64,000 nt of DNA from positions 149,151 through 213,150 of IMG/VR virus record IMGVR_UViG_3300033997_000136; one strand, written 5' to 3'. Made by a program: the position numbers and the translations under genes. This document shows positions 8,593 through 62,907 of the stretch, in pieces. Under the pieces are notes generated by a model that did no database searches, was not told the origin of the DNA, and saw only the letters and a program-made list of their open reading frames with translations. Positions within the stretch are counted from its first letter, which is position 1; each line of letters begins with the position of its first letter.

Positions 8593-8605
8593 AAACATAC
8601 ATTAT
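8593..8605 (+). promoter_or_regulatory. early (vRNAP) promoter-like box aaacaTACATTAT
   Basis: Recurrent intergenic motif, resembling phiKZ early TATATTAC; 40 bp upstream of ATG 8646. Confidence 0.55.
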
Positions 8606-8645
8606 AAAGTTGATTATCATAAATATAATTCAAAAGGAAGCCCAC

Positions 8646-32067: not shown

Positions 32068-32079
32068 GACACACATTAT
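32068..32079 (+). promoter_or_regulatory. early promoter-like box gacaCACATTAT
   Basis: Same motif as upstream of phuZ; no ORF follows before a terminator. Confidence 0.5.
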
Positions 32080-32084
32080 TAATG

Positions 32085-48096: not shown

Positions 48097-48918
48097 TTAT
48101 CCGCGATTCATCATTAAACCAATAAATTTCTTCATGCGATTTCTGTCGTTTGTAAATTGAGCTTTACCCCATTTCTCTTTAAAGATAGTTTGATACAACT
48201 CATTTGCATCTGCGTATCCTTCGACGACTTGTTTGAAGACACCTAAACTAAAACCGCCTTTGATTTTATCATCTCCTAATTTAATGATAAGATGATTGTA
48301 GACATACGCCTTGACTGCATACTCTACCATCTCAGCATAAAGTGGGAACAGGCTAGGTTTTAACGTGTTCATGTTTTCATCATGAGAGATGTTAAGCACG
48401 ACGTACAATTGTGTTGCATTAATAACCGCTTGGTCTTGCATCACAATCGTAGTAGGACCAATAGGTTCTACATGACAGGTGTTTACAATCGGTAATGATG
48501 CAACAGAGCGATACATTTCAATGGCTGCGTTAAGAAGCATATTCCCTGAAGAACGTGAGTTGGTAGGGAACCATGAATGTGCGATGTTGGTGTAGTGTAC
48601 ACTCTTTACAGAGATGATACGACGACCCCCGAGTAATTCTGCAGGGATATCGTAGGTACGTGTGTATACATCGTGGTCAGTACGTTTACATTTGTTTAAA
48701 TCCACAGCAATTTCTAAAGCACCTTTTAAACCACAGTCAACGTTGACTCGGTCATTAATGACTTTATGACGAATGTTGTGTTCTACAAAATCAAATGTGT
48801 TTGAAGGAGAATCAAAAGCACTAGCAAAGCTGCGAGGCGCAGTTTTAAACGCTTCTTTTAAAATCTCTTCAGGCACCACATGTTTAACGTGGTTTAATGC
48901 ATAGTTGATAGCGTTCAT
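48097..48918 (-). CDS. conserved virion structural protein
   Basis: Start moved to MNAINYAL at 48918 (AAGGA RBS); AVKAYVYN, GYADANELY motifs; divergent from phuZ. Confidence 0.65.
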   Translation of the reverse strand: MNAINYALNHVKHVVPEEILKEAFKTAPRSFASAFDSPSNTFDFVEHNIRHKVINDRVNVDCGLKGALEIAVDLNKCKRTDHDVYTRTYDIPAELLGGRRIISVKSVHYTNIAHSWFPTNSRSSGNMLLNAAIEMYRSVASLPIVNTCHVEPIGPTTIVMQDQAVINATQLYVVLNISHDENMNTLKPSLFPLYAEMVEYAVKAYVYNHLIIKLGDDKIKGGFSLGVFKQVVEGYADANELYQTIFKEKWGKAQFTNDRNRMKKFIGLMMNRG

Positions 48919-49004
48919 AATGCGTTCCTTTACTACAGCATAGAGAGAATGAAATAGAAATCTATACCATAGTCTTAGATAGAAGTATGGAATAGATAAA
49001 AAAT

Positions 49005-49018
49005 AAGACACACATTAT
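49005..49018 (+). promoter_or_regulatory. early promoter-like box aagacaCACATTAT upstream of phuZ
   Basis: Recurrent motif. Confidence 0.55.
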
Positions 49019-49094: not shown

Positions 49095-50105
49095 ATGTCC
49101 GCAAAGAAAGAAATGCAAACTGCCACTCAATCCGCTGAAAAGAAACCAGCCGTATTACGGTTATGGGGATGTGGTGGTGCTGGTATCAATATTGCATCGC
49201 GTTACATTGACAGCAAACCTGAAGAAGGGTGTGCGATTATTAAGCCTGCGTTCTTAGACACCAGCGACAGTAACTTAGGTTCAATGGATTACCCTGACAA
49301 GTATCTGATTCCAGGTGTAAATGGTAGCGGTGCAGTGCGTGGTACAAATGCTGAACCTATCTCTAAAAGCATCAAAAACATTTTAGCGTCTATTTCACCA
49401 GGTGATGTAAACGTTATCATTAGCAGTGCCGGTGGTGGCAGCGGTGCGGTGTTCTCTGCGTTGCTAACAGGTGAACTTTTGGATATGAATCAGAAGGTGT
49501 TTGTGATTCTGATTGGTAGTACCGAATCGCGTATCCGTACTGAAAACACAATCAAGGCATTAAGTAACTTAGAGCTGATTGCTGAAGATACGAATCAGCC
49601 TGTGAACGTGCACTATTTGCAAAACGTAGAGAGTCGTACCAAAGTCGATAAAGATGCTATCGCTGCTATCGCCGCCTTTAGCTTAGTGACAAGCAACATG
49701 CATCTGGGTCTTGACCCTGAAGACATCCATAACTTCTTACGTCACCACCGTTTCACAGGTGCATCTCCACGCCTGACTATGTTAGACATTATTGTACAGA
49801 CTGAAAAGTCTGATGTGTCTGACAAGTTAGCATCGTACGACGCACCGTACAGTATCTTGTCCTTGTACAACAACCAAGACGATGTGCGCACCAACATCCC
49901 CGCAGATTACGACACGCAGGGTTTCTGTAACTTAGCGTCAAAGAGCTTGAGTGAACTTCACTTAATCACTCATGATGGCGTTGCAGTTATTTACAAACAG
50001 TTGTCTGACTTAAACCAAAAGATAGCAACTGCACGTGAAAGCGTGGTGCAACGTGAATCAATTGCCGCTGAAGGTGCTGTGAAAGGTAAACGTTTAGTTC
50101 TGTAA
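49095..50105 (+). CDS. phuZ: PhuZ phage tubulin
   Basis: GCGGAGINI, DTS, GSGAVR, tubulin signature GGGSG, DPEDI; AGGAG RBS. Confidence 0.93.
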   Translation: MSAKKEMQTATQSAEKKPAVLRLWGCGGAGINIASRYIDSKPEEGCAIIKPAFLDTSDSNLGSMDYPDKYLIPGVNGSGAVRGTNAEPISKSIKNILASISPGDVNVIISSAGGGSGAVFSALLTGELLDMNQKVFVILIGSTESRIRTENTIKALSNLELIAEDTNQPVNVHYLQNVESRTKVDKDAIAAIAAFSLVTSNMHLGLDPEDIHNFLRHHRFTGASPRLTMLDIIVQTEKSDVSDKLASYDAPYSILSLYNNQDDVRTNIPADYDTQGFCNLASKSLSELHLITHDGVAVIYKQLSDLNQKIATARESVVQRESIAAEGAVKGKRLVL

Positions 50106-50110
50106 AAACT

Positions 50111-50138
50111 AGAAGGAGAGGGTAACACCTCTCCTTCT
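50111..50138 (+). terminator. intrinsic terminator
   Basis: agaaggagagg-gtaaca-cctctccttct plus T tract. Confidence 0.85.
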
Positions 50139-50255
50139 TTTATCTCTTTTTTATTTTTTGTTTATAGAACGCTCTAGAATCGATTATAATAGAAAAAGAT
50201 ACATAGGTAAGCCATGTTATGTTTAGAACGCTCTACGTCTTTTGTACGCATTTTA

Positions 50256-50268
50256 AAGTATACATTAT
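50256..50268 (+). promoter_or_regulatory. early promoter-like box aagtaTACATTAT
   Basis: Recurrent motif, 35 bp upstream of ATG 50303. Confidence 0.55.
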
Positions 50269-50302
50269 TAAGATAGTGTAACCATTATAAAAAAGGAATC
50301 TC

Positions 50303-50749
50303 ATGAACTGGTTTAGTGTATTCGATATTAAAGATGCGTTTGAAGTCATGTACAATGCACTTAAATTAAATCACCCTTCATTGACTAAACGTCTGTTGGT
50401 TGATAGTGTGAATCGGATATTTAGTCTGTTATCGATTTACATGAATAGACCTGATGTTGCTGAGTTGGAGTTGACTGGTTCAATCCATGAACTGAATGAA
50501 GAAATCATGTTGTTACTCTCTGTGTTCATTGATGGAGAGACGGAAGATGTTCTATTGATGGAAATTTATTCTGAAATGAATAAAGTCATTCACTTAACGA
50601 TTCCTGCACCCATGCTTCATCAACATGTATTAACTGCAGTATGTGTTTCACCTCGTGGTGATGAAATGCTTGGGTTCTTTGGTGAGATGACAAAGGAATC
50701 TGAAAAAGTCGTGAACGATGTGTTCTTAAAGTTAGGATTAAAACCATGA
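50303..50749 (+). CDS. hypothetical protein (array member 1)
   Basis: ORF with AAGGA RBS. Confidence 0.7.
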   Translation: MNWFSVFDIKDAFEVMYNALKLNHPSLTKRLLVDSVNRIFSLLSIYMNRPDVAELELTGSIHELNEEIMLLLSVFIDGETEDVLLMEIYSEMNKVIHLTIPAPMLHQHVLTAVCVSPRGDEMLGFFGEMTKESEKVVNDVFLKLGLKP

Positions 50750-51111
50750 TTACATTGTTCGATATTCGAGATTACCATACAGTGCTTGATGTGGATGATT
50801 TGGGATTGAACGATGTGAATCGCAAAGAGTTAGCGGATATCATTGCGTACATCTTGTATCGTGAGATTGCACTTGATACGGGTGTGTACTCTATTGATTT
50901 ACGGTACATGGCATGTACACAACCTGGTGTGGTGAGTGTATTACAAACCGTTATCAGTATTGTGTATAAAACTGCATTGGAATTTAATGCATGGTCGTGT
51001 AAAGTTAGCCTTAACGGATATGACTTACAACTTGACTGGGGACCATTGGAACGCTACAAAGCATTGTCTAAATGGTACAACCCACCTCTTCAATTAAAAC
51101 CAAAACTATAA
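50746..51111 (+). CDS. hypothetical protein (array member 2)
   Basis: ATGA overlap; LFDIRD start resembles VFDIKD of upstream gene. Confidence 0.7.
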   Translation: MITLFDIRDYHTVLDVDDLGLNDVNRKELADIIAYILYREIALDTGVYSIDLRYMACTQPGVVSVLQTVISIVYKTALEFNAWSCKVSLNGYDLQLDWGPLERYKALSKWYNPPLQLKPKL

Positions 51112-51127
51112 CCACGGAGTTTACTCG

Positions 51128-52300
51128 ATGTCTACAGTGAATGTAACTGATTTCATGCAACTTGCATTAGGAACGACCGAACCAAGTGAGATGGAATTAT
51201 TTCATGGACAAACCGATATTCTTTTAACAGACGATACTGAGTTCTGCAACAACTTGCGTCAGATATCTCGTGCACTTTTTACTATCAGTGGACCACTGCG
51301 CGTCAGTACATTCATTGAGTTCTTGTGTCGTGATTTTAGTCTTTTAAAAGAAGCGCGTAAAAGTAGTGCAGAAGCGAAAGCAAAACCAAAGTTTTCGTTA
51401 AAAACATTACGTGCACTTAGCTTTGAGTACACGCCGCAATTAAAAGGTGAAATCCTAACATACATCGAAACGAACGTAGCTGAGTTTAATGCATTTGTTA
51501 CTCGCGTTAAGATAAACCAAGCACGTGAAGTGTTGTTATCCGCGATTAAACCAAAGATTACGTTAAACGAAGTGATGTTGAACAATGAGTATTCGCAGCT
51601 ATTGACTAACGAACAAACGGTGGTATACGACGCGTATCACGAGTCATTGCTTCGTGAGTATGAAAATCAGTTACATGACTTTACAGTCATTGACCACATT
51701 AATCGCTTGCTTGTTAACAAAGCACGTGAATTATCGATGACAAAAGGTGCTGTGAAGAATCGACTATCACGTAAGTACGATAAGTTCTCAACCTTAATTT
51801 CGACAACACCACCACCGGGTGTTCAAACAACGTCAAAAACGTTGTACATCACTGAAATCACAGACTTGTTACAACAAGACTTGGGTGATGTGTTTGAACC
51901 TTCAATTGTCAGCGTTCTTATGGCCGACGCAGGTGGTCTTTTAGTTGCTTACATCAATGAGCTGTTTAGACTGAAGTTGCGCTGGGTTACATCAAAGAAA
52001 GAATCGCCTTTATTAGAGGCGTTGATTTGTTTGGTTGGTGACGAAATAGCCATGTATGTATTTGAAGATAATGAGACTACCTACAGTCTTATTTTAAATA
52101 TATTCAATGGTATATTTGAAACACTAAATCTAGAGAACTGGTTTAAAGAATGGGACTACCCAGCAGTTCAAATAGCAGGTCGTCGTTTGGTGTTGTTAAA
52201 TCAAGGAGATTATCGAATTCATGCGTACCATCGAGCTGTAGACCGTGGTGATGAATCGATTAATTTCATTGACCACACCGAAGTGATTCTTCCGTACTAG
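51128..52300 (+). CDS. conserved hypothetical protein (C-terminal domain is array member 3)
   Basis: 390 aa; C-terminal GDYRI motif; GGAG RBS. Confidence 0.7.
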   Translation: MSTVNVTDFMQLALGTTEPSEMELFHGQTDILLTDDTEFCNNLRQISRALFTISGPLRVSTFIEFLCRDFSLLKEARKSSAEAKAKPKFSLKTLRALSFEYTPQLKGEILTYIETNVAEFNAFVTRVKINQAREVLLSAIKPKITLNEVMLNNEYSQLLTNEQTVVYDAYHESLLREYENQLHDFTVIDHINRLLVNKARELSMTKGAVKNRLSRKYDKFSTLISTTPPPGVQTTSKTLYITEITDLLQQDLGDVFEPSIVSVLMADAGGLLVAYINELFRLKLRWVTSKKESPLLEALICLVGDEIAMYVFEDNETTYSLILNIFNGIFETLNLENWFKEWDYPAVQIAGRRLVLLNQGDYRIHAYHRAVDRGDESINFIDHTEVILPY

Positions 52301-52302
52301 AG

Positions 52303-52692
52303 GTGCCTATGCCTTCTAAATGTGCATTAGTGTCTATTCAGGAGATAATTGATTTACTCCCTGAAACGATTCCAGACACAGTTAAAAGTCGTGTAGTTCA
52401 TTTAATGTTACGTCGTCTTTTACAAAAGGAAGTGTACGTTACACTCACTCCTCGTGATTTGTTAAAAGTATACGTTCCTATTCCTGAGGATTTAGACGAG
52501 ATACTCGATGTTACAAAAGATGCACTTATCATGCAGTTTAGTAAGTGGTGTATGATAGCACCGTATCGTGTATCTGCTGTTCAACCTCATGGGCAGACTG
52601 ATGTGTTTATTGAATGCAAGTACGATGTTACATTAGCGCGAGAATTACTTTTAGAAGAAGATGGTGAATTAACCATTGCTTCTGACACATAA
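52303..52692 (+). CDS. hypothetical protein (array member 4)
   Basis: ORF; real start may be ATG 52309 (GAGG RBS). Confidence 0.7.
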   Translation: MPMPSKCALVSIQEIIDLLPETIPDTVKSRVVHLMLRRLLQKEVYVTLTPRDLLKVYVPIPEDLDEILDVTKDALIMQFSKWCMIAPYRVSAVQPHGQTDVFIECKYDVTLARELLLEEDGELTIASDT

Positions 52693-52701
52693 ACCAACTA
52701 C

Positions 52702-52727
52702 AGTAGCAGGACAAACGTCCTGCTACT
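52702..52727 (+). terminator. hairpin / weak terminator
   Basis: agtagcaggac-aaac-gtcctgctact. Confidence 0.65.
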
Positions 52728-52758
52728 TATTCCCAAATTAATGTAGTGGAGATTACTT

Positions 52759-53211
52759 ATGCGAAGTTCTACGTGTAACCTAAACGACGAACCATTGTTT
52801 CATCCAGATTGGAAGAATGTAGTCGCGTTGTTAAAATCGACGCAGGAACACACCATGTGTATTGATGGCGCTACGCTTTACAACGACATTTATCTGAAAA
52901 AGAAAGAAGAAGGGCTTACAAATAAAAACGCACGGCAAATTTATATGCTTTGCATTGAAGAAGCTGTTCGACAAGCAGATAGAGAATTAGCGTATCAGTA
53001 CAGAACACCTCGTTACAAAGCGCTTTGTGATGAAAAGGTGTTTAATCAATACAGTGCTTTGTATGAAGTTCTTGAATTTAAACGCGAGATTATGAATCAT
53101 TGCAGTCGCCTGTTACGTTCAACACCCCAACCTTTAGAAGTTGAGTTAACTCTTCTTCAAGTAGAAAAACGCAATGTCTCGTTGGTTCTTCGTTTTCATC
53201 AACTGGAGTAG
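52759..53211 (+). CDS. hypothetical protein (array member 5)
   Basis: ORF with GGAG RBS. Confidence 0.7.
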   Translation: MRSSTCNLNDEPLFHPDWKNVVALLKSTQEHTMCIDGATLYNDIYLKKKEEGLTNKNARQIYMLCIEEAVRQADRELAYQYRTPRYKALCDEKVFNQYSALYEVLEFKREIMNHCSRLLRSTPQPLEVELTLLQVEKRNVSLVLRFHQLE

Positions 53212-53214
53212 GAT

Positions 53215-53670
53215 ATGCAACGTTCACTGTTGCTAAATATGTCTTCTATAGCCACACTTATTAAAAGTCATCAAAGCGTATCAAGGGAGCACCTGTATCA
53301 ACTTTTACTTATTGTTGCAGGAGTGGCATGTTCTCGTTTAGTCAATTACGTGGATGACCTTAGTTCTAAAACGTTATTGGAGATAGCAGACAGTGAATTG
53401 TGTGACTTGGTGTATGAAGAACTTATGTTAATCATTCAATCTCAACACCCTGAAGACATGTTTGATATAGAGGTGGAAAAACGTGCACTTAACTTTGCAG
53501 AAGAGTGGTACATAACCATCATGGAGTGTCTTGCGATGTGGACGCCGGATGTATTGGGTGCTATCTATATATCTGCAAAACAATACGGTCATCGAATGTA
53601 CAATGATATTTCACTTATTGAAATCAGTGCACGATATGACGTTTTGTACATTATTAGTTGGGATGATTAA
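53215..53670 (+). CDS. hypothetical protein (array member 6)
   Basis: ORF with GGAG RBS. Confidence 0.7.
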   Translation: MQRSLLLNMSSIATLIKSHQSVSREHLYQLLLIVAGVACSRLVNYVDDLSSKTLLEIADSELCDLVYEELMLIIQSQHPEDMFDIEVEKRALNFAEEWYITIMECLAMWTPDVLGAIYISAKQYGHRMYNDISLIEISARYDVLYIISWDD

Positions 53671-53673
53671 TGT

Positions 53674-54033
53674 ATGCAAAAAGGTTATCGAATTGATTTT
53701 GACCAAGAACATGAATTCTTTTACGAACAAGTCGTTGAAGGTCAATTTTGGGATTATGATTTAAATGAACTCATTGCAACCATTATTGAAACCAATAACC
53801 CACTACCCCCACTGAGTGATATTCATATTCCATACGACCATAGTCTAAATTCAAACGAGCCTTTTAACAACGCAGTACGTAGTTTGACTTATACTGTGTA
53901 TTGGGCCATCGCTGGAAATAAACTAGTAGACGAGTACATGAACATCACCCACACAAAATTCTTCTTAGATGAAGATGCTCGTGAATTGATTTTACTACCT
54001 AATGATTGTAATTATTGTGAACCACCCACGTAA
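53674..54033 (+). CDS. hypothetical protein (array member 7)
   Basis: ORF, tightly coupled to neighbours. Confidence 0.7.
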   Translation: MQKGYRIDFDQEHEFFYEQVVEGQFWDYDLNELIATIIETNNPLPPLSDIHIPYDHSLNSNEPFNNAVRSLTYTVYWAIAGNKLVDEYMNITHTKFFLDEDARELILLPNDCNYCEPPT

Positions 54034-54044
54034 GAAGGTGAAGT

Positions 54045-54533
54045 ATGATTGGACTATACACAGACCACGAATTATCGTCGTGGATAAGTCGCTTTGAATC
54101 CATGTATCCATTTATGTCAGCAGGACACTTTATTGCTTTGTTCAGCAGATTTTGGGCGTATGATGGCGTTATTCATTTTGATGATGATGCAACACGTACA
54201 CCAAGTTACATGTTAGAAGAAGAAATGCAGGAAGAGATATTTGATAAGTGCCATGCAGAAATAGAAGGGTTGTTGTATCACAATGGTCTTCGTGATGAAG
54301 TTCATCAATTGATGGAAATTCTAATGATACCTTATGTGAATCCAGAATGGTTTGCTACACTCATACCACTTCGTGGTGGTGATTATTTCATTCTTCAATG
54401 GGATATAGAGGTATCTGATGGACCGCTTGATAGTGATGCGATTATTCCACACATCAAAGGTTTGTTTGTGAATCATATAGACCCGATGTTGGTGTTAAAT
54501 AATTCATGGTTGCGAGGGGAATTGAATGGCTAG
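54045..54533 (+). CDS. hypothetical protein (array member 8)
   Basis: ORF with AAGGTG RBS. Confidence 0.7.
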   Translation: MIGLYTDHELSSWISRFESMYPFMSAGHFIALFSRFWAYDGVIHFDDDATRTPSYMLEEEMQEEIFDKCHAEIEGLLYHNGLRDEVHQLMEILMIPYVNPEWFATLIPLRGGDYFILQWDIEVSDGPLDSDAIIPHIKGLFVNHIDPMLVLNNSWLRGELNG

Positions 54534-54924
54534 TAAAACAGACTTTACAGATGGTGCAGTCTACAACTTTGTGACGACATCCACTGTGCTTGGTACATTT
54601 AAAGGTGTTACCGCTGAAGGGGTTGTTAATTATCGAGTTGCATCAAAATACATTGATGCTGCTGCTCTACACGCAAACATCTTTAGCACACTACCCGCAG
54701 GAACACCAAACGACTTTACGCAATACCAATATTTGATTGTGCGTCATCCAAATGGTAACGAAACTGCCGTGGGTTTACCGTGGATACAAGATGGTACAGT
54801 GGAAGTTGTTGAACGTACAGATTGCCACATTAAGTTGGTTGATGTTTCTTCTGAGAAAGAAGCATTGATACGTCAACTTATTGCTGATAACGGCTTTCGT
54901 TTAGGTTCGTTAGTGTTCAAATAA
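54526..54924 (+). CDS. conserved Chimalliviridae protein upstream of DNA polymerase (phiKZ gp49-like)
   Basis: LHANIFSTLPAGTPND, AVGLPWI motifs; synteny. Confidence 0.65.
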   Translation: MASKTDFTDGAVYNFVTTSTVLGTFKGVTAEGVVNYRVASKYIDAAALHANIFSTLPAGTPNDFTQYQYLIVRHPNGNETAVGLPWIQDGTVEVVERTDCHIKLVDVSSEKEALIRQLIADNGFRLGSLVFK

Positions 54925-54938
54925 TTTCCTACACTGGG

Positions 54939-55064
54939 AACCCCATTATATGAGGTTTAGCTTGGGGTTACTCCCGTTCTCCCGATGTGTCCTGCAACAT
55001 ATCGGTTCTTTACTGGGGATTGTTTAACAATCATTTAGGAGGGTAGAAATACCCTCCATTTTTT
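54939..55064 (+). other. structured intergenic element (four hairpins, last one a terminator); contains 25-codon ORF 54950-55027
   Basis: aacccca/tggggtt, ccgatgtgt/acatatcgg, gattgtt/aacaatc, ggagggta/taccctcc plus T tract. Confidence 0.45.
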
Positions 55065-55137
55065 CTTTTATTTTTTTCCTTTTTTATTTTTTGTTACAGA
55101 TGACGTTTATCGTGTGTATAGTTATCTCGGAGACACT

Positions 55138-57282
55138 ATGGAAAATTTACACACACTGTTCCAACGGGAACCAGCGCAGTATCGTCGAGATTTAGATATA
55201 AAGACTGCGTACTTTCAGGACATGATTTCAGGTATATCCAAGAAATATGGCATCAGTGTTGAAAAAGCAAAAGAGTTTGTCTTAAACGTTACATCTGAGC
55301 AAGGTAAATATCCGTTTAAAGATAAGCCAACACGAATTGTTGCACCAAATGAACATGGTGACCGCCAGCTTGTTGATACAACCTTTTTGTCGTACGTGAG
55401 TAAAGCTCAAGAAAACGATATGGTGTTATCACCCTCTATGGTTATCTATGAGAATCCAGATAGAGAACATTCTATCTCAGCCAAATTCATCGCAGTAAAC
55501 GTAAAGGCTCGTGGCGTTGCTAAAGATGAAATGAAACAAGCAGAAAGTGCTGGTCTTGTTGATTTGCAAATCAGTAAAAACAACGAACAGAAAAACAAGA
55601 AGCTCGATAACAACGCACTCTCTGGCGCGCACGTATCTGCATCAACGGTGTTACATAAGCCAAGTATTCACACATCACTAACATCTATGTGTCGCTGTGC
55701 TGCAAACTACGGTAATGCGAATAACGAAAAGATTATTGCAGGGAACCGTCATTACTTCTCACCAGACATTATCGAAGCGAATATATTAGCTACGATACGT
55801 TTAGTTAACCTTGAAACATTTGGCGCAATGGTTATTGAACACAATCTGGTGTATCCAACAGTTGACCAAGCGATGGAAGTGGCTATTCATGGTAGCCATC
55901 GTTATTTTAGAAATCCAAAACGAATGGATGATGTTCGCCACCTTCTAGAAGGGATATCTCCTTTAGAACGTGCAGCATGGGTTTACATTGGTGACCTGTA
56001 TCACATCTGTAAGTTTAATCAGGATTTTGTATTTAAGCTACTTGACCGTTTGTCTTGTCGCACAAATCCTGTTGTTGAAATGGAATCAGGTGCTATTTTA
56101 AAAGTATTGCCTGAAGATGGTGTTATCTTAGTCGCACACTTATGTGCAGATTTACTTGCAGGTAAGTCAATTAAAGCTGTGAAAGAAATGCCTATCGAAA
56201 CACAGCAGATTGTTGCAGCTACTGCCTACAATGTGTTTACAACACTGATAGACTACCATTCGTTTATTCGTGAAATCTTTGTTACAGACATTATGCCGTC
56301 GTCTGTTTGGGATGTACCATCACAAGTTCGCGAAGCAGTGTTGGCAGGTGATACCGACTCAACGATATTCTCAGTTCAAAATTGGTTGGAATGGCGTTTT
56401 AATGAAATCACGTTCAAACCAGAAGCAGTGAACTTTGGTCATGCGGTTGCATTCTTAACATCTGCATCTATCATCAACGTACTTGCTATCATGTCTAAAA
56501 ACGTAGGTGTGCGTGATAGACAGTTATTCCAGTATGCAATGAAGTCTGAGTTCTACTTCTCTGTGTTCTTGTTAACGTCACGTGCTAAAACTTACGCTGC
56601 GATTAAAGCAATACAAGAAGGTATCGTTAAATCGAAGTTTGAGTTAGAACGCAAGGGTGCAGTCCTTAAAGGAAGTAATACACCTGAGTTCATTATGGAA
56701 AAAGTAGAAGCTGCTTTAATCCGAATACTCAAAACTGTACGTGCTGATGAAAAGATACGCGTGATGGATTACTTGACCGAATGTGCTGACTTAGAACGTG
56801 CATTGGAGAAGGGGTTACGTGCTGGAGATACGTCGTTCTATAAACGTGCTCAGATAAAGCCTGCAGAGACGTACAAGAAGGGTGAAGATGAAAGTCCATA
56901 CTCACACTACTTGTTGTGGAAAGAAGTGTTTGCTGATAAGTATGGACACACTGTAGAGCCACCGTACGCTGGATTAAAGATTAATCTAGAAAGCGATGGA
57001 AGTCAGCCGTTATTCAATAAATGGTTAGCGTCTATTGAAGACCCTGTTATTCGCGATAAACTTATTGCGTATTTAAAACGCACAGGGAAAACAAAGATAA
57101 CTAACGTAATAATTCCACAAGCAATTGCCAATTTAAACGGCGTGCCTGCGGAGTTATTAGATGGAATGGGATTACGGAAGATTATCTCGACCTTGTTAGA
57201 ACCGTACTACGTATTACTTGAACCACTTGGTCAGTTCTTTGTAGATGACAACCAACTACGTTTAGTGTCTGATTTTTATTAA
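55138..57282 (+). CDS. family B DNA polymerase, polymerase subunit of split enzyme (phiKZ gp50-like)
   Basis: QKNKKLDNNALSG (motif B), GDTDSTIF (motif C), KTYAA, ERKG; ATG 55138 with GGAG RBS; no exonuclease domain seen. Confidence 0.88.
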   Translation: MENLHTLFQREPAQYRRDLDIKTAYFQDMISGISKKYGISVEKAKEFVLNVTSEQGKYPFKDKPTRIVAPNEHGDRQLVDTTFLSYVSKAQENDMVLSPSMVIYENPDREHSISAKFIAVNVKARGVAKDEMKQAESAGLVDLQISKNNEQKNKKLDNNALSGAHVSASTVLHKPSIHTSLTSMCRCAANYGNANNEKIIAGNRHYFSPDIIEANILATIRLVNLETFGAMVIEHNLVYPTVDQAMEVAIHGSHRYFRNPKRMDDVRHLLEGISPLERAAWVYIGDLYHICKFNQDFVFKLLDRLSCRTNPVVEMESGAILKVLPEDGVILVAHLCADLLAGKSIKAVKEMPIETQQIVAATAYNVFTTLIDYHSFIREIFVTDIMPSSVWDVPSQVREAVLAGDTDSTIFSVQNWLEWRFNEITFKPEAVNFGHAVAFLTSASIINVLAIMSKNVGVRDRQLFQYAMKSEFYFSVFLLTSRAKTYAAIKAIQEGIVKSKFELERKGAVLKGSNTPEFIMEKVEAALIRILKTVRADEKIRVMDYLTECADLERALEKGLRAGDTSFYKRAQIKPAETYKKGEDESPYSHYLLWKEVFADKYGHTVEPPYAGLKINLESDGSQPLFNKWLASIEDPVIRDKLIAYLKRTGKTKITNVIIPQAIANLNGVPAELLDGMGLRKIISTLLEPYYVLLEPLGQFFVDDNQLRLVSDFY

Positions 57283-58515: not shown

Positions 58516-58654
58516 AAACATACATTATCATTGTGGTTATACGGATTTAAAATAAAATTCTACATAGCCACCCCACAGTATGAGTTTAACTACTATCGCC
58601 TAAACGCGATAGACCTAATGATGTCGAATGAATAAAAATTCAAAGACACATTAT
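58516..58654 (+). promoter_or_regulatory. two tandem early promoter-like boxes upstream of chmA
   Basis: aaacaTACATTAT at 58516-58528 and aaagaCACATTAT at 58642-58654. Confidence 0.55.
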
Positions 58655-58718
58655 TAACCTGAATTCGAGATACTCTCTCGATGTTTGCGCAAATATAAAA
58701 GTCAAAACGGAGATTTTC

Positions 58719-62289: not shown

Positions 62290-62907
62290 ATGGCTCAAAT
62301 GGTCTCAATGGACCCAGGTCTATTTAGACATCGTGTGTATGGTGAACGTAACGAGAGTACCATGCAATTCATTCAGAATGCATACGAGGGTTCTCGCGAT
62401 ATTCTTCAACGCACAAGTTCAGCTATGCTTGAACGTATCGAGCAGTCATGGGAGAAATATTCATCTGAAGCATCGCAGCGACGTTTAAAAGCGGCTGCAC
62501 GTAATATAGAAAACGGTTGGAAAGGAAACCGTGTTCGACCATTGCGTAGCATCGGTGAACTTCAAACTGCACCACCTATTATGCAACGTTACATGATGGC
62601 AGAACCTACAACACGTGCTCGTTATCAACGAGGTCAATGTGAAGGGTTCCGTGGTAGCTATGTTGATTTGTTTGAAGGACAAATTAGCTATGGTCACTAC
62701 GATTGGCGTCGTGTGATGGATGGTATGATAGAAGAGGATAGCGAAGGGTATATGGTTGTACACGAATTTGGTGATGACTTACTGTCGGGAGACGTTGAGT
62801 TAGAGTTTGACCAGAAACGTTCAATCAGAGATACTTGGGCATTTCAAGTTGCCGCATTTGCTAAGGATGAAGATGATCCTACAAGCAGATGGAACGCTTC
62901 CTTGTAA
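62290..62907 (+). CDS. conserved Chimalliviridae core protein (possibly phiKZ gp59/Imp3-like)
   Basis: MQRYMMAEP, HYDWRRVMDG, DPTS motifs; directly follows nvRNAP beta'; identity from synteny only. Confidence 0.5.
   Translation: MAQMVSMDPGLFRHRVYGERNESTMQFIQNAYEGSRDILQRTSSAMLERIEQSWEKYSSEASQRRLKAAARNIENGWKGNRVRPLRSIGELQTAPPIMQRYMMAEPTTRARYQRGQCEGFRGSYVDLFEGQISYGHYDWRRVMDGMIEEDSEGYMVVHEFGDDLLSGDVELEFDQKRSIRDTWAFQVAAFAKDEDDPTSRWNASL

What the first reader, a model, noticed from the sequence alone, without database searches (positions are those of the whole stretch)
50303..54533. Array of ~8 highly diverged, same-architecture proteins between phuZ and DNA polymerase: candidate nuclear-import adaptor family
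Seen: eight consecutive, mostly acidic 120-160-aa units (one is the C-terminal domain of the 390-aa ORF). Each starts with a short hydrophobic strand then helix (SVFDIKD, TLFDIRD, TLYITE, ALVSIQE, MCIDGAT, LLLNMSS, YRIDFDQ, IGLYTDH), has a helical middle, and ends in a beta-hairpin (VCVSPRGDEMLGFF, KVSLNGYDLQLDW, VQIAGRRLVLLN, AVQPHGQTDVFIEC, LQVEKRNVSLVLRF, IEISARYDVLYIISW, FFLDEDARELILLP, LIPLRGGDYFILQW). An early box lies upstream. Known (recalled): phiKZ import factors Imp2/gp47 and Imp5/gp48 map to this interval. Inference: an ancient tandem expansion of one fold diversified into cargo-specific adaptors for the nuclear shell.
Basis: inference. Interest (0 to 1): 0.7.

Follow-up and report, generated by a model that had tools for sequence, protein, structure and literature searches.

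The report
Fast-evolving small-protein operon beside phage tubulin
Between the tubulin and DNA-polymerase genes of an uncultured nucleus-forming jumbo phage lies a real operon of eight small, very fast-evolving proteins; two of them are predicted to share a phage-specific fold also predicted for a known phage-nucleus import adaptor, but no function has been tested.

Summary
The eight plus-strand ORFs at 50303-54533 are real genes. A relative with 95% identical polymerase (L093) has the same eight genes in the same order, all under purifying selection.

Together with the SH3DP gene they form one unit between two terminators. This unit is syntenic with phiKZ gp40-gp49.

Each position is its own orthologous lineage:
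- u3's C-terminal domain belongs to the phiKZ gp43 family (65 loci).
- u7 belongs to a family found in 49 loci.
- u2, u4, u5, u6 and u8 have counterparts at the same position in relatives.

No sequence or profile method links one unit to another, or any unit to Imp2 or Imp4.

This fold has no match among solved structures. Its structural neighbours are almost all small chimallivirus proteins, including Imp2 homologs, at modest scores.

The other six units could not be folded.

A shared fold is supported for two of eight units. An ancient tandem expansion is plausible but unproven. A role as import adaptors rests on analogy only.

The parts
49095..50105 (+). PhuZ tubulin (upstream flank, not part of the array)
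   Evidence: PHROG 4733 tubulin PhuZ E 9e-72; Pfam Tubulin
50111..50138 (+). Intrinsic terminator after PhuZ: 11-bp stem followed by a T run
   Evidence: The hairpin is kept by compensatory changes in L093 and L096.
50139..50302 (+). Leader of the operon. Conserved blocks at about 50200-50221 and 50250-50270 (ATACATTATTA core at 50260-50270); likely phage promoter.
   Evidence: Three-phage footprint. The core motif is enriched and also lies upstream of chimallin. A sigma-70-like match at 50161-50190 is also present. The TAGAACGCTCTA repeat (50165, 50224) is not conserved.
50303..50749 (+). u1, 148 aa, pI 4.8; the fastest-evolving unit; overlaps the u2 start by 4 nt
   Evidence: 60% identical to its L093 ortholog, pN/pS about 0.33. 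One homolog cluster in 5.8 billion proteins. No counterpart detectable in L096. Fold not determined.
50746..51111 (+). u2, 121 aa; position-specific family found in 12 loci
   Evidence: jackhmmer; L096 counterpart E 7e-6; 93% identical in L093
51128..51829 (+). u3 N-terminal region (aa 1-234): helical, clade-specific extension
51830..52300 (+). u3 C-terminal domain (aa 235-390): member of the phiKZ gp43 family; strand, six helices, beta-hairpin, helix
   Evidence: Family HMM E 4e-9. jackhmmer: 66 hits in 65 loci, one per locus. phiKZ gp43 is recruited at E 3e-22. AF2 pLDDT about 81-93. BFVD neighbours include gp43 orthologs and Imp2 homologs.
52303..52692 (+). u4, 129 aa; position-specific family (11 loci by synteny-guided search)
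   Evidence: L096 counterpart E 1.5e-4; collinear family; 80% identical in L093
52759..53211 (+). u5, 150 aa, pI 6.9; narrow family (4 loci)
   Evidence: L096 counterpart E 6.6e-4; 71% identical in L093; fold not determined
53215..53670 (+). u6, 151 aa; narrow family (5 loci)
   Evidence: L096 counterpart E 4.8e-3; 84% identical in L093; fold not determined
53674..54033 (+). u7, 119 aa; widespread family, usually the penultimate or last gene before SH3DP; fold beta1-alpha1-alpha2-alpha3-beta2-beta3
   Evidence: jackhmmer: 56 hits in 49 loci, with adjacent duplicates in 6 loci. AF2 pLDDT 89, pTM 0.81. BFVD neighbours are chimallivirus small proteins. No PDB, AFDB or Atlas relatives.
54045..54533 (+). 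u8, 162 aa; last gene before SH3DP (same position as phiKZ Imp4); overlaps the SH3DP start by 8 nt
   Evidence: dN/dS 0.06 against L082. Exhaustive HMMER finds only the 90% and 27% orthologs; the latter sits at the same position in L096. Synteny-guided family in 11 loci. Fold not determined.
54526..54924 (+). SH3DP protein (phiKZ gp49 ortholog): last gene of the operon, not one of the eight units
   Evidence: Pfam PF20287 E 2e-32; phiKZ gp49 E 3e-15; present in 49 of 52 loci
55038..55057 (+). Intrinsic terminator between SH3DP and the DNA polymerase
   Evidence: 8-bp stem followed by a T run
55114..57282 (+). Divergent family B DNA polymerase (downstream flank)
   Evidence: Pfam PF20286 E 2e-216

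Best explanation
The region is one terminator-bounded operon (about 50139-55057) of an uncultured chimallivirus. It encodes eight small, mostly acidic, very fast-evolving proteins plus the conserved SH3DP protein. It is the counterpart of phiKZ gp40-gp49.

Shown:
- All eight are real genes under purifying selection.
- Their order is fixed, and each position is a separate orthologous lineage. The u3 C-domain is the phiKZ gp43 family, u7 is a second widespread family, and the others are narrower.
- The u3 C-domain and u7 are both predicted to have an N-terminal strand, a helical bundle and a C-terminal beta-hairpin.
- This fold has no relative among solved structures. Its predicted structural neighbours are almost all small proteins of other chimalliviruses, including homologs of the phiKZ import adaptor Imp2.

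Inferred:
- The units descend from very old duplications of one chimallivirus-specific fold, and have diverged beyond any sequence recognition.
- By analogy with Imp2 and Imp4, which are encoded in the same interval of phiKZ, at least some units act as cargo-specific adaptors. They would present particular proteins to the Imp1/Imp3 import machinery, which this phage also encodes.

The function is not tested here.
For: - Genes real and constrained.
- Operon boundaries and conserved leader.
- Synteny with phiKZ and 60+ chimallivirus loci.
- Position-specific orthology: seven of eight best hits in L096 are the positional counterpart; families are collinear across the clade.
- u3C is the gp43 family. 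u7 is a family in 49 loci.
- AF2 models match the predicted layout.
- BFVD neighbours of both models are chimallivirus small proteins, with 7 shared targets in the two top-50 lists. Several proteins come from a single phage. Eowyn's five hits match by length interval genes gp074, 075, 076, 083 and 084.
- Imp2 homologs among the u3 neighbours: PhiPA3 gp044 at probability 0.87; PS119XW 264 aa and SL2 178 aa at 0.85.
- Tandem duplication does occur here and decays fast. L050 has three adjacent u7-family genes at 21-25% identity, one pair undetectable by BLAST; five further loci have adjacent pairs.
- Core import factors are present: Imp3 homolog at 62290-62907 (E 3e-24) and Imp1 homolog in the same genome (E 4e-30).
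- phiKZ imp2 and imp4 lack disruptive transposon insertions (PMC12676376).
Against: - No sequence signal of common origin was found. BLASTP, phmmer and jackhmmer are negative. hhalign among units and among deep families gives at most 13% probability. A permutation test finds only a generic amphipathic-helix motif at non-collinear positions.
- Fold similarity is modest: Foldseek E-values 3e-3 to 0.7, TM 0.36-0.6.
- The two models could not be superposed directly. u3C has six or seven helices, u7 has three.
- Six of the eight units have no structural evidence at all.
- Imp4 homologs do not appear among the top structural neighbours.
- In phiKZ, gp40, 41, 44, 45 and 46 tolerate transposon insertions, so the interval is functionally mixed.
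- Identifying the BFVD hits with interval genes rests partly on matching lengths.
Confidence: 0.42

Rival explanations
1. The interval is a permissive region for hypervariable accessory genes, carrying unrelated small proteins with diverse jobs such as host takeover or anti-defence. On this view the similar layout is a simple, recurrent way for about 120-160 residues to fold. Only Imp2 and Imp4 of the Pseudomonas phages are import adaptors.
For: - No detectable sequence relationship between positions, even with deep profiles.
- Very fast divergence: u1, u4, u5 and u6 are lost to iterative search even in a collinear relative.
- Small acidic proteins behind a likely promoter shared with chimallin.
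- The interval varies in length (2.3-8.5 kb) and content, with insertions such as a thymidylate synthase in L081.
- phiKZ gp40, 41, 44, 45 and 46 tolerate transposon insertions.
- Fold scores are modest.
Against: - Gene order and position-specific orthology are conserved far beyond what a free accessory region would show.
- The gp43 and u7 families are found in 49-65 loci.
- The structural neighbours of both models are almost all chimallivirus proteins, several per phage, with nothing in PDB or the large Atlas clusters. That argues against a generic fold.
- All units are under purifying selection.
Confidence: 0.3
2. The proteins are accessory factors of the replication machinery or of nucleus assembly, not import adaptors. 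They would be co-expressed with SH3DP and functionally tied to the adjacent DNA polymerase.
For: - They share an operon with SH3DP, a domain family defined by its association with phage DNA polymerases, immediately upstream of the polymerase.
- This neighbourhood is conserved in essentially all loci examined.
- phiKZ gp43 and gp49 have no insertions in the stricter Tn-seq table.
Against: - A terminator separates the operon from the polymerase gene.
- Replisome partners usually evolve slowly, whereas these change 2-10 times faster than the polymerase at non-synonymous sites.
- No nucleic-acid-binding or enzymatic signature was found.
- The only members of the interval with a known role (Imp2, Imp4) act in import.
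Confidence: 0.15
3. Some of the ORFs are not genes but chance open frames in AT-rich phage DNA.
For: No database family matches. Orphan status of u1, u5 and u6 in most searches.
Against: - All eight are conserved in length and order in L093, with saturated synonymous sites and pN/pS of 0.08-0.33.
- Positional counterparts exist in L096 and L079.
- Packing is tight, with 4- and 8-nt overlaps.
Confidence: 0.01

Closest known systems
phiKZ gp43 family (PHIKZ043; PhiPA3 gp039, 201phi2-1 gp75)
   Same: The u3 C-terminal domain is a sequence-level member (family HMM E 4e-9; phiKZ gp43 recruited at E 3e-22). There is one copy per locus, at the same place in the interval. It is the most conserved gene between PhuZ and SH3DP, found in 65 loci.
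   Different: u3 carries a 234-residue N-terminal extension found only in its own clade, whereas phiKZ gp43 extends at the C-terminus. No function is known for the family.
Imp2 (phiKZ gp47; PhiPA3 gp044), cargo-specific factor for import of the recombinase Nlp1 into the phage nucleus
   Same: It is encoded in the same PhuZ-to-SH3DP interval, is of similar size, and has no known domains. Predicted structures of Imp2 homologs are among the Foldseek neighbours of the u3 C-domain (probability 0.85-0.87) and, weakly, of u7 (0.38).
   Different: No sequence or profile similarity to any unit. TM-scores are only 0.26-0.40 normalised by target. By sequence, Imp2 is confined to Pseudomonas phages. No functional data exist for the window's proteins.
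Imp4 (phiKZ gp48), factor required with Imp5 for import of host TopA
   Same: Imp4 is the last gene before the SH3DP gene, the position that u8 occupies here.
   Different: No sequence similarity. Imp4 has no detectable homolog even in PhiPA3 or 201phi2-1 in my local search. It is not among the top structural neighbours of u7 or u3.
Core phage-nucleus import system Imp1/PicA and Imp3
   Same: The phage encodes homologs of both (Imp3 at 62290-62907; Imp1 at G000:C1:6211-7605), so the pathway that Imp2 and Imp4 feed into is present.
   Different: These are unrelated, well-conserved proteins outside the array. Their presence is context, not evidence that the array proteins use them.

Membership tests
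phiKZ gp43 family | Significant sequence-profile match to family members, including phiKZ gp43 | tested here: met
   u3 residues 239-377 against the family HMM, E 4e-9. jackhmmer from u3C recruits phiKZ gp43 at E 3e-22 and, with L093/L096 added, 65 loci. hhalign probability 90%.
phiKZ gp43 family | Single copy, located early in the PhuZ-to-SH3DP interval | tested here: met
   66 hits in 65 loci. The order u2, u3C ... u7, SH3DP holds in L013, L079, L081 and L085.
Imp2 (phiKZ gp47) family | Sequence homology to phiKZ gp47 or PhiPA3 gp044 | tested here: not met
   BLASTP and phmmer give no hit. The Imp2 jackhmmer family stays within 6 Pseudomonas-phage loci. hhalign of the Imp2 family against the u7, u3C and u2 families and against single units gives at most 4.8%.
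Imp2 (phiKZ gp47) family | Same fold as Imp2 | tested here: inconclusive
   u3 model against BFVD: PhiPA3 gp044 probability 0.87 (TM by target 0.36); SL2 178 aa 0.85 (0.40); PS119XW 264 aa 0.85 (0.26). u7 against SL2 178 aa: probability 0.38, TM by query 0.50. No direct superposition was possible. Six units are unmodelled.
Imp2 (phiKZ gp47) family | Required for import of a specific cargo; itself imported in an Imp1-dependent way | not testable with these tools
   Defined genetically in phiKZ. The window's phage is uncultured.
Imp4 (phiKZ gp48) | Sequence homology to gp48 | tested here: not met
Imp4 (phiKZ gp48) | Last gene before the SH3DP (gp49) gene | tested here: met
   u8 occupies this position. 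Position alone does not show homology.
Tandem paralog array of one fold | Detectable similarity between units (pairwise or profile-profile) | tested here: not met
   Best pairwise E 0.02 in a 9-sequence database. hhalign between position families gives at most 13%. Among 741 family pairs, only positional equivalents merge. The permutation motif test is negative for a collinear motif.
Tandem paralog array of one fold | All units adopt the same fold | tested here: inconclusive
   u7 and u3C share the layout of N-terminal strand, helices and C-terminal hairpin, and share 7 BFVD neighbours. u1, u5, u6 and u8 fold at pLDDT 32-41 without alignments. u2 and u4 were not modelled.
Tandem paralog array of one fold | Evidence that duplication operates in this interval | tested here: met
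   Adjacent u7-family genes in L050 (three copies), L052, L047/48, L037 and L021; copies are 21-25% identical or undetectable pairwise. No such duplicate was detected in the window itself.
Chimalliviridae (nucleus-forming jumbo phages) | Chimallin, PhuZ, divergent DNA polymerase with SH3DP, Imp1 and Imp3 present in conserved order | tested here: met

The most novel reading that the evidence does not exclude
In all chimalliviruses the PhuZ-to-DNA-polymerase interval is a birth-and-death array of a single virus-specific fold (strand, helical bundle, hairpin). This array supplies the cargo-specific adaptors of the phage nucleus. On this reading Imp2-like adaptors are not a Pseudomonas-phage peculiarity but one visible tip of a universal repertoire. 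That repertoire would be ordered by position and diverging quickly, with each position dedicated to one cargo or cargo class that is presented to Imp1.
Probability: 0.2. Interest if true: 0.8.

Novelty: new variant of a known kind. Interest (0 to 1): 0.55.

Why it matters
How the phage nucleus selects its cargo is an open question. The known cargo-specific factors (Imp2, Imp4, Imp5) are reported as confined to Pseudomonas phiKZ-like phages on the basis of sequence searches.

Suppose the interval proteins of distant chimalliviruses share Imp2's fold and keep a fixed order. That would give a concrete set of candidate adaptors, defined by position, in every nucleus-forming phage. The gp43-like and u7-like families, found in 49-65 loci, could then be tested in cultured phages such as phiKZ, PhiPA3, Goslar or Eowyn.

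It would also be a striking case of paralogs diverging past all sequence recognition while keeping gene order.

If the fold link is not confirmed, this remains a well-delimited, conserved operon of fast-evolving proteins of unknown function. That is ordinary for jumbo phages.

Tried and rejected
1. Megablast of the region against GenBank phages found no match.
2. Pfam and PHROGs gave nothing for the eight units.
3. phmmer of each unit against ORFs of 52 chimallivirus loci gave no hits, while SH3DP hit 49.
4. hhalign was negative apart from u3C to the gp43 family and a weak u7 to F3 match. I ran it with single units, with two-sequence profiles and with synteny-guided families, against each other and against 73 interval families and the Imp2, gp45 and gp46 families.
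5. A permutation test for a shared ungapped motif found only a generic acidic amphipathic-helix pattern at non-collinear positions, which I rejected as evidence of homology.
6. The protein-atlas search for u1: the Atlas model has pLDDT 0.41, so its neighbours are meaningless.
7. Complex prediction with u1, u5, u6 and u8 gave pLDDT about 32 and the verdict 'no answer'. It is not evidence for or against folding or binding.
9. The TAGAACGCTCTA repeat in the leader is absent elsewhere in the window and not conserved in relatives, so I dropped it as a regulatory candidate.
10. The hit of u8 to a 4939-aa Cys/Thr-rich repeat protein consists of six weak repeated segments of about 10 bits each. I judged it spurious.
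11. k-mer enrichment in intergenic regions returned only T-rich terminator tails.

Full report
**What is there.** Seven are acidic (pI 4.2-5.2); u5 is neutral. None matches a Pfam or PHROG family. Upstream is PhuZ (PHROG 4733, E 9e-72). Downstream lie an SH3DP protein (PF20287, E 2e-32; 54526-54924), a divergent family B DNA polymerase, a minus-strand gene, chimallin and an RNA polymerase subunit. The window is the end of a 213-kb IMG/VR virus record, estimated 77% complete. Its PhuZ is at most about 35% identical to that of any cultured phage.

**Operon structure.** A strong terminator (50111-50138) follows PhuZ, and another (55038-55057) follows SH3DP. u1/u2 overlap by 4 nt and u8/SH3DP by 8 nt. 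I aligned the 164-nt leader with two relatives whose synonymous sites are saturated. The alignment shows the hairpin kept by compensatory changes, and two conserved blocks. The stronger block is TTTTAAAgtATACATTATTA, 33 nt before the u1 start. Its core occurs 8 times in the window against 2.5 expected (0 of 100 shuffles reach 8). Sites include two upstream of chimallin, a tandem pair upstream of ORF 32390, and one just before u7. This fits a phage promoter class shared with chimallin. That it is 'early' is an inference.

**Are they genes?** Yes. A search with u1 found a 58% identical protein on contig L093. L093 carries the same eight genes with lengths 148, 121, 390, 127, 151, 151, 119 and 162 aa, followed by SH3DP and the polymerase. 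Identities are 60% (u1), 93% (u2), 81% (u3), 80% (u4), 71% (u5), 84% (u6), 77% (u7) and 90% (u8), against 95% for the polymerase. Synonymous sites are near saturation and pN/pS is about 0.08-0.33. For u8 against L082, dN/dS is 0.06.

**Synteny and orthology.** I gathered about 95 chimallivirus loci. The PhuZ-to-SH3DP interval exists in 61 of the first 77 loci. It is 2.3-8.5 kb long and filled with small plus-strand ORFs, as in phiKZ gp40-gp48. Results by unit:
- The u3 C-terminal domain (aa 235-390) belongs to the most conserved interval family. That family includes phiKZ gp43 (E 3e-22) and occurs once per locus in 65 loci.
- The u3 N-terminal 234 residues are clade-specific.
- u7 belongs to a family in 49 loci, normally the last or penultimate gene before SH3DP.
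- u2 has homologs in 12 loci.
- An exhaustive HMMER search with u8 found a 27% identical protein. It lies at the same position in another collinear eight-gene array, L096.

I then scored two-sequence profiles of each unit against the eight L096 proteins. For u2 to u8 the best hit is exactly the positional counterpart (E from 4.5e-21 to 4.8e-3), and every cross-position hit has E > 0.05. Only u1 has no detectable counterpart. Synteny-guided family building extends u2-u8 collinearly into L079 and beyond. Each position is therefore a separate, ordered orthologous lineage.

**Are the units related to each other or to Imp2/Imp4 by sequence?** No evidence was found.
- Pairwise BLASTP is negative.
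- Comparison with phiKZ gp40-gp49 finds only SH3DP to gp49 and u3 to gp43.
- hhalign between deep families (u3C 53 sequences, u7 40, u2 9, Imp2 6) gives at most 10% probability.
- hhalign between position families gives at most 13%.
- Among 741 pairs of interval families, only positional equivalents merge.
- A permutation test for a shared motif is negative for anything collinear.
- By tblastn, Imp2 homologs occur only in Pseudomonas phages, as published.
- The family profiles hit nothing else in the window.

**Structure.** Only two prediction jobs were available, so I used them on the units with deep alignments.
- u7 (pLDDT 89, pTM 0.81) is strand 5-8, helices 10-22, 30-40 and 59-81, then strands 95-98 and 104-108.
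- The u3 C-domain (pLDDT about 81-93) is strand 235-240, six helices, strands 343-350 and 353-361, then a helix.

Neither model has a relative among solved structures:
- Foldseek against PDB gives a best probability of 0.10.
- There are no relatives in the large ESM Atlas clusters.
- AlphaFold DB holds two small uncharacterised look-alikes of u7.

Against BFVD, both models retrieve almost only small uncharacterised proteins of chimalliviruses, often several from one phage. Foldseek probabilities reach 1.0, but E-values are only 3e-3 to 0.7 and TM is 0.4-0.6. Seven targets are common to the two top-50 lists. The five Eowyn hits have lengths 131, 187, 153, 116 and 123 aa. These equal the lengths of interval genes gp074, 075, 076, 083 and 084. 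By sequence only gp075 belongs to the u3C family. The Eowyn gene that matches the u7 profile, gp082, is not among the five. This match by length is an inference.

The u3 model also retrieves PhiPA3 gp044 at probability 0.87. The paper identifies PhiPA3 orf44 as an Imp2 homolog. Two further hits have the lengths of Imp2 homologs: 264 aa in PS119XW and 178 aa in SL2 (both 0.85). u7 hits the same SL2 protein weakly (0.38). TM-scores for the Imp2 homologs are 0.26-0.40 normalised by target, so the link is suggestive, not established.

The four orphans u1, u5, u6 and u8 did not fold without alignments (pLDDT 32-41). u2 and u4 were not modelled.

**Duplication.** The window has no detectable duplicate. 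Six related loci, however, carry adjacent u7-family genes. In L050 three sit in a row, at 21-25% identity or undetectable pairwise. So duplication followed by rapid decay of similarity does operate in this interval. That makes an ancient common origin of the positions plausible but not shown.

**Function.** Published work shows three things.
- phiKZ orf47 (Imp2) is needed for import of the recombinase Nlp1 and is itself imported.
Together with orf287 (Imp5) it is needed for TopA import.
- All of these depend on Imp1 and Imp3.

Imp2 and Imp4 lack disruptive transposon insertions. In the supplementary table, gp43 and gp49 also show none, whereas gp40, 41, 44, 45 and 46 tolerate many. I do not know exactly how the two supplementary tables differ.

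The window's phage encodes an Imp3 homolog (62290-62907, E 3e-24) and an Imp1 homolog (E 4e-30), so the core pathway is present. Nothing here tests whether any unit binds cargo, binds Imp1 or reaches the nucleus.

**Verdict.**
It is an operon that includes SH3DP, with each position a conserved lineage.
- Same-architecture claim: confirmed for two of eight units and indirectly supported by the neighbours in other phages.
- Ancient tandem expansion: plausible, unproven.
- Import-adaptor function: a reasonable hypothesis by synteny and weak fold similarity to Imp2.

I found no paper in the searchable library describing a fold family in this interval.

Noticed in passing
window 62290-62907 (+): This 205-aa ORF, directly after the RNA polymerase subunit gene, is a clear homolog of phiKZ gp59 (Imp3), the co-factor of the import protein Imp1. 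BLASTP gives E 3e-24 and 29% identity over 184 residues. It has no Pfam family.
   Followed up: partly
G000:C1:6211-7605 (+) = locus L098, outside the window: The same virus record encodes a 559-aa homolog of phiKZ gp69 (Imp1/PicA), at E 4e-30 and 28% identity. If the record is circularly permuted, the gene lies about 11.5 kb downstream of chimallin, as in phiKZ.
   Followed up: partly
window 58520-58530, 58646-58656, 32071-32081 (plus a tandem copy just upstream), 8597-8607, 50260-50270, 53646-53656: A motif with an A-rich run followed by A(T/C)ACATTATTA recurs in intergenic regions upstream of chimallin (twice), ORF 32390, ORF 8610 and the u1 operon. It also occurs inside the 3' end of u6, 20 nt before u7. 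It is a candidate phage promoter element of unknown class.
   Followed up: partly
window 50165-50176 and 50224-50235: An exact 12-nt repeat, TAGAACGCTCTA (nearly palindromic), occurs twice in the leader and nowhere else in the window. It is not conserved in L093 or L096, so its meaning is unclear.
   Followed up: yes
L050:11165-12386; L052:13959-14823; also L047/L048, L037, L021: Two or three adjacent u7-family genes sit immediately before SH3DP in several uncultured chimalliviruses. The copies are only 21-25% identical or cannot be detected pairwise.
   Followed up: partly
L081:4167-5531: One relative has a 454-aa thymidylate-synthase-domain gene inserted into the PhuZ-to-SH3DP interval. L083-L085 have one to three extra small genes between SH3DP and the polymerase. 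The interval accepts insertions.
   Followed up: no
window 48097-49011 (-): A DUF7484 gene (PF24302, E 3e-67) lies on the minus strand immediately upstream of PhuZ, here and in the near relatives. In phiKZ and its Pseudomonas relatives, the conserved minus-strand gene gp42 instead lies inside the interval, between gp41.3 and gp43. I did not test whether gp42 is the DUF7484 homolog; if it is, the two clades differ by a local rearrangement.
   Followed up: no
protein P0124 (4939 aa) from the exhaustive search with u8: u8 residues 51-111 match six repeats of a giant Cys/Thr/Ser-rich protein at about 10 bits each (summed E 2e-12). It looks like a spurious match amplified by repeats, not homology.
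   Followed up: partly
L092 (Klebsiella phage Eowyn) gp082: This 133-aa interval protein weakly matches both the u7-family profile (E 1e-4) and the u3C-family profile (E 2e-3). It is the only hint at sequence level that the two families might be related.
   Followed up: no
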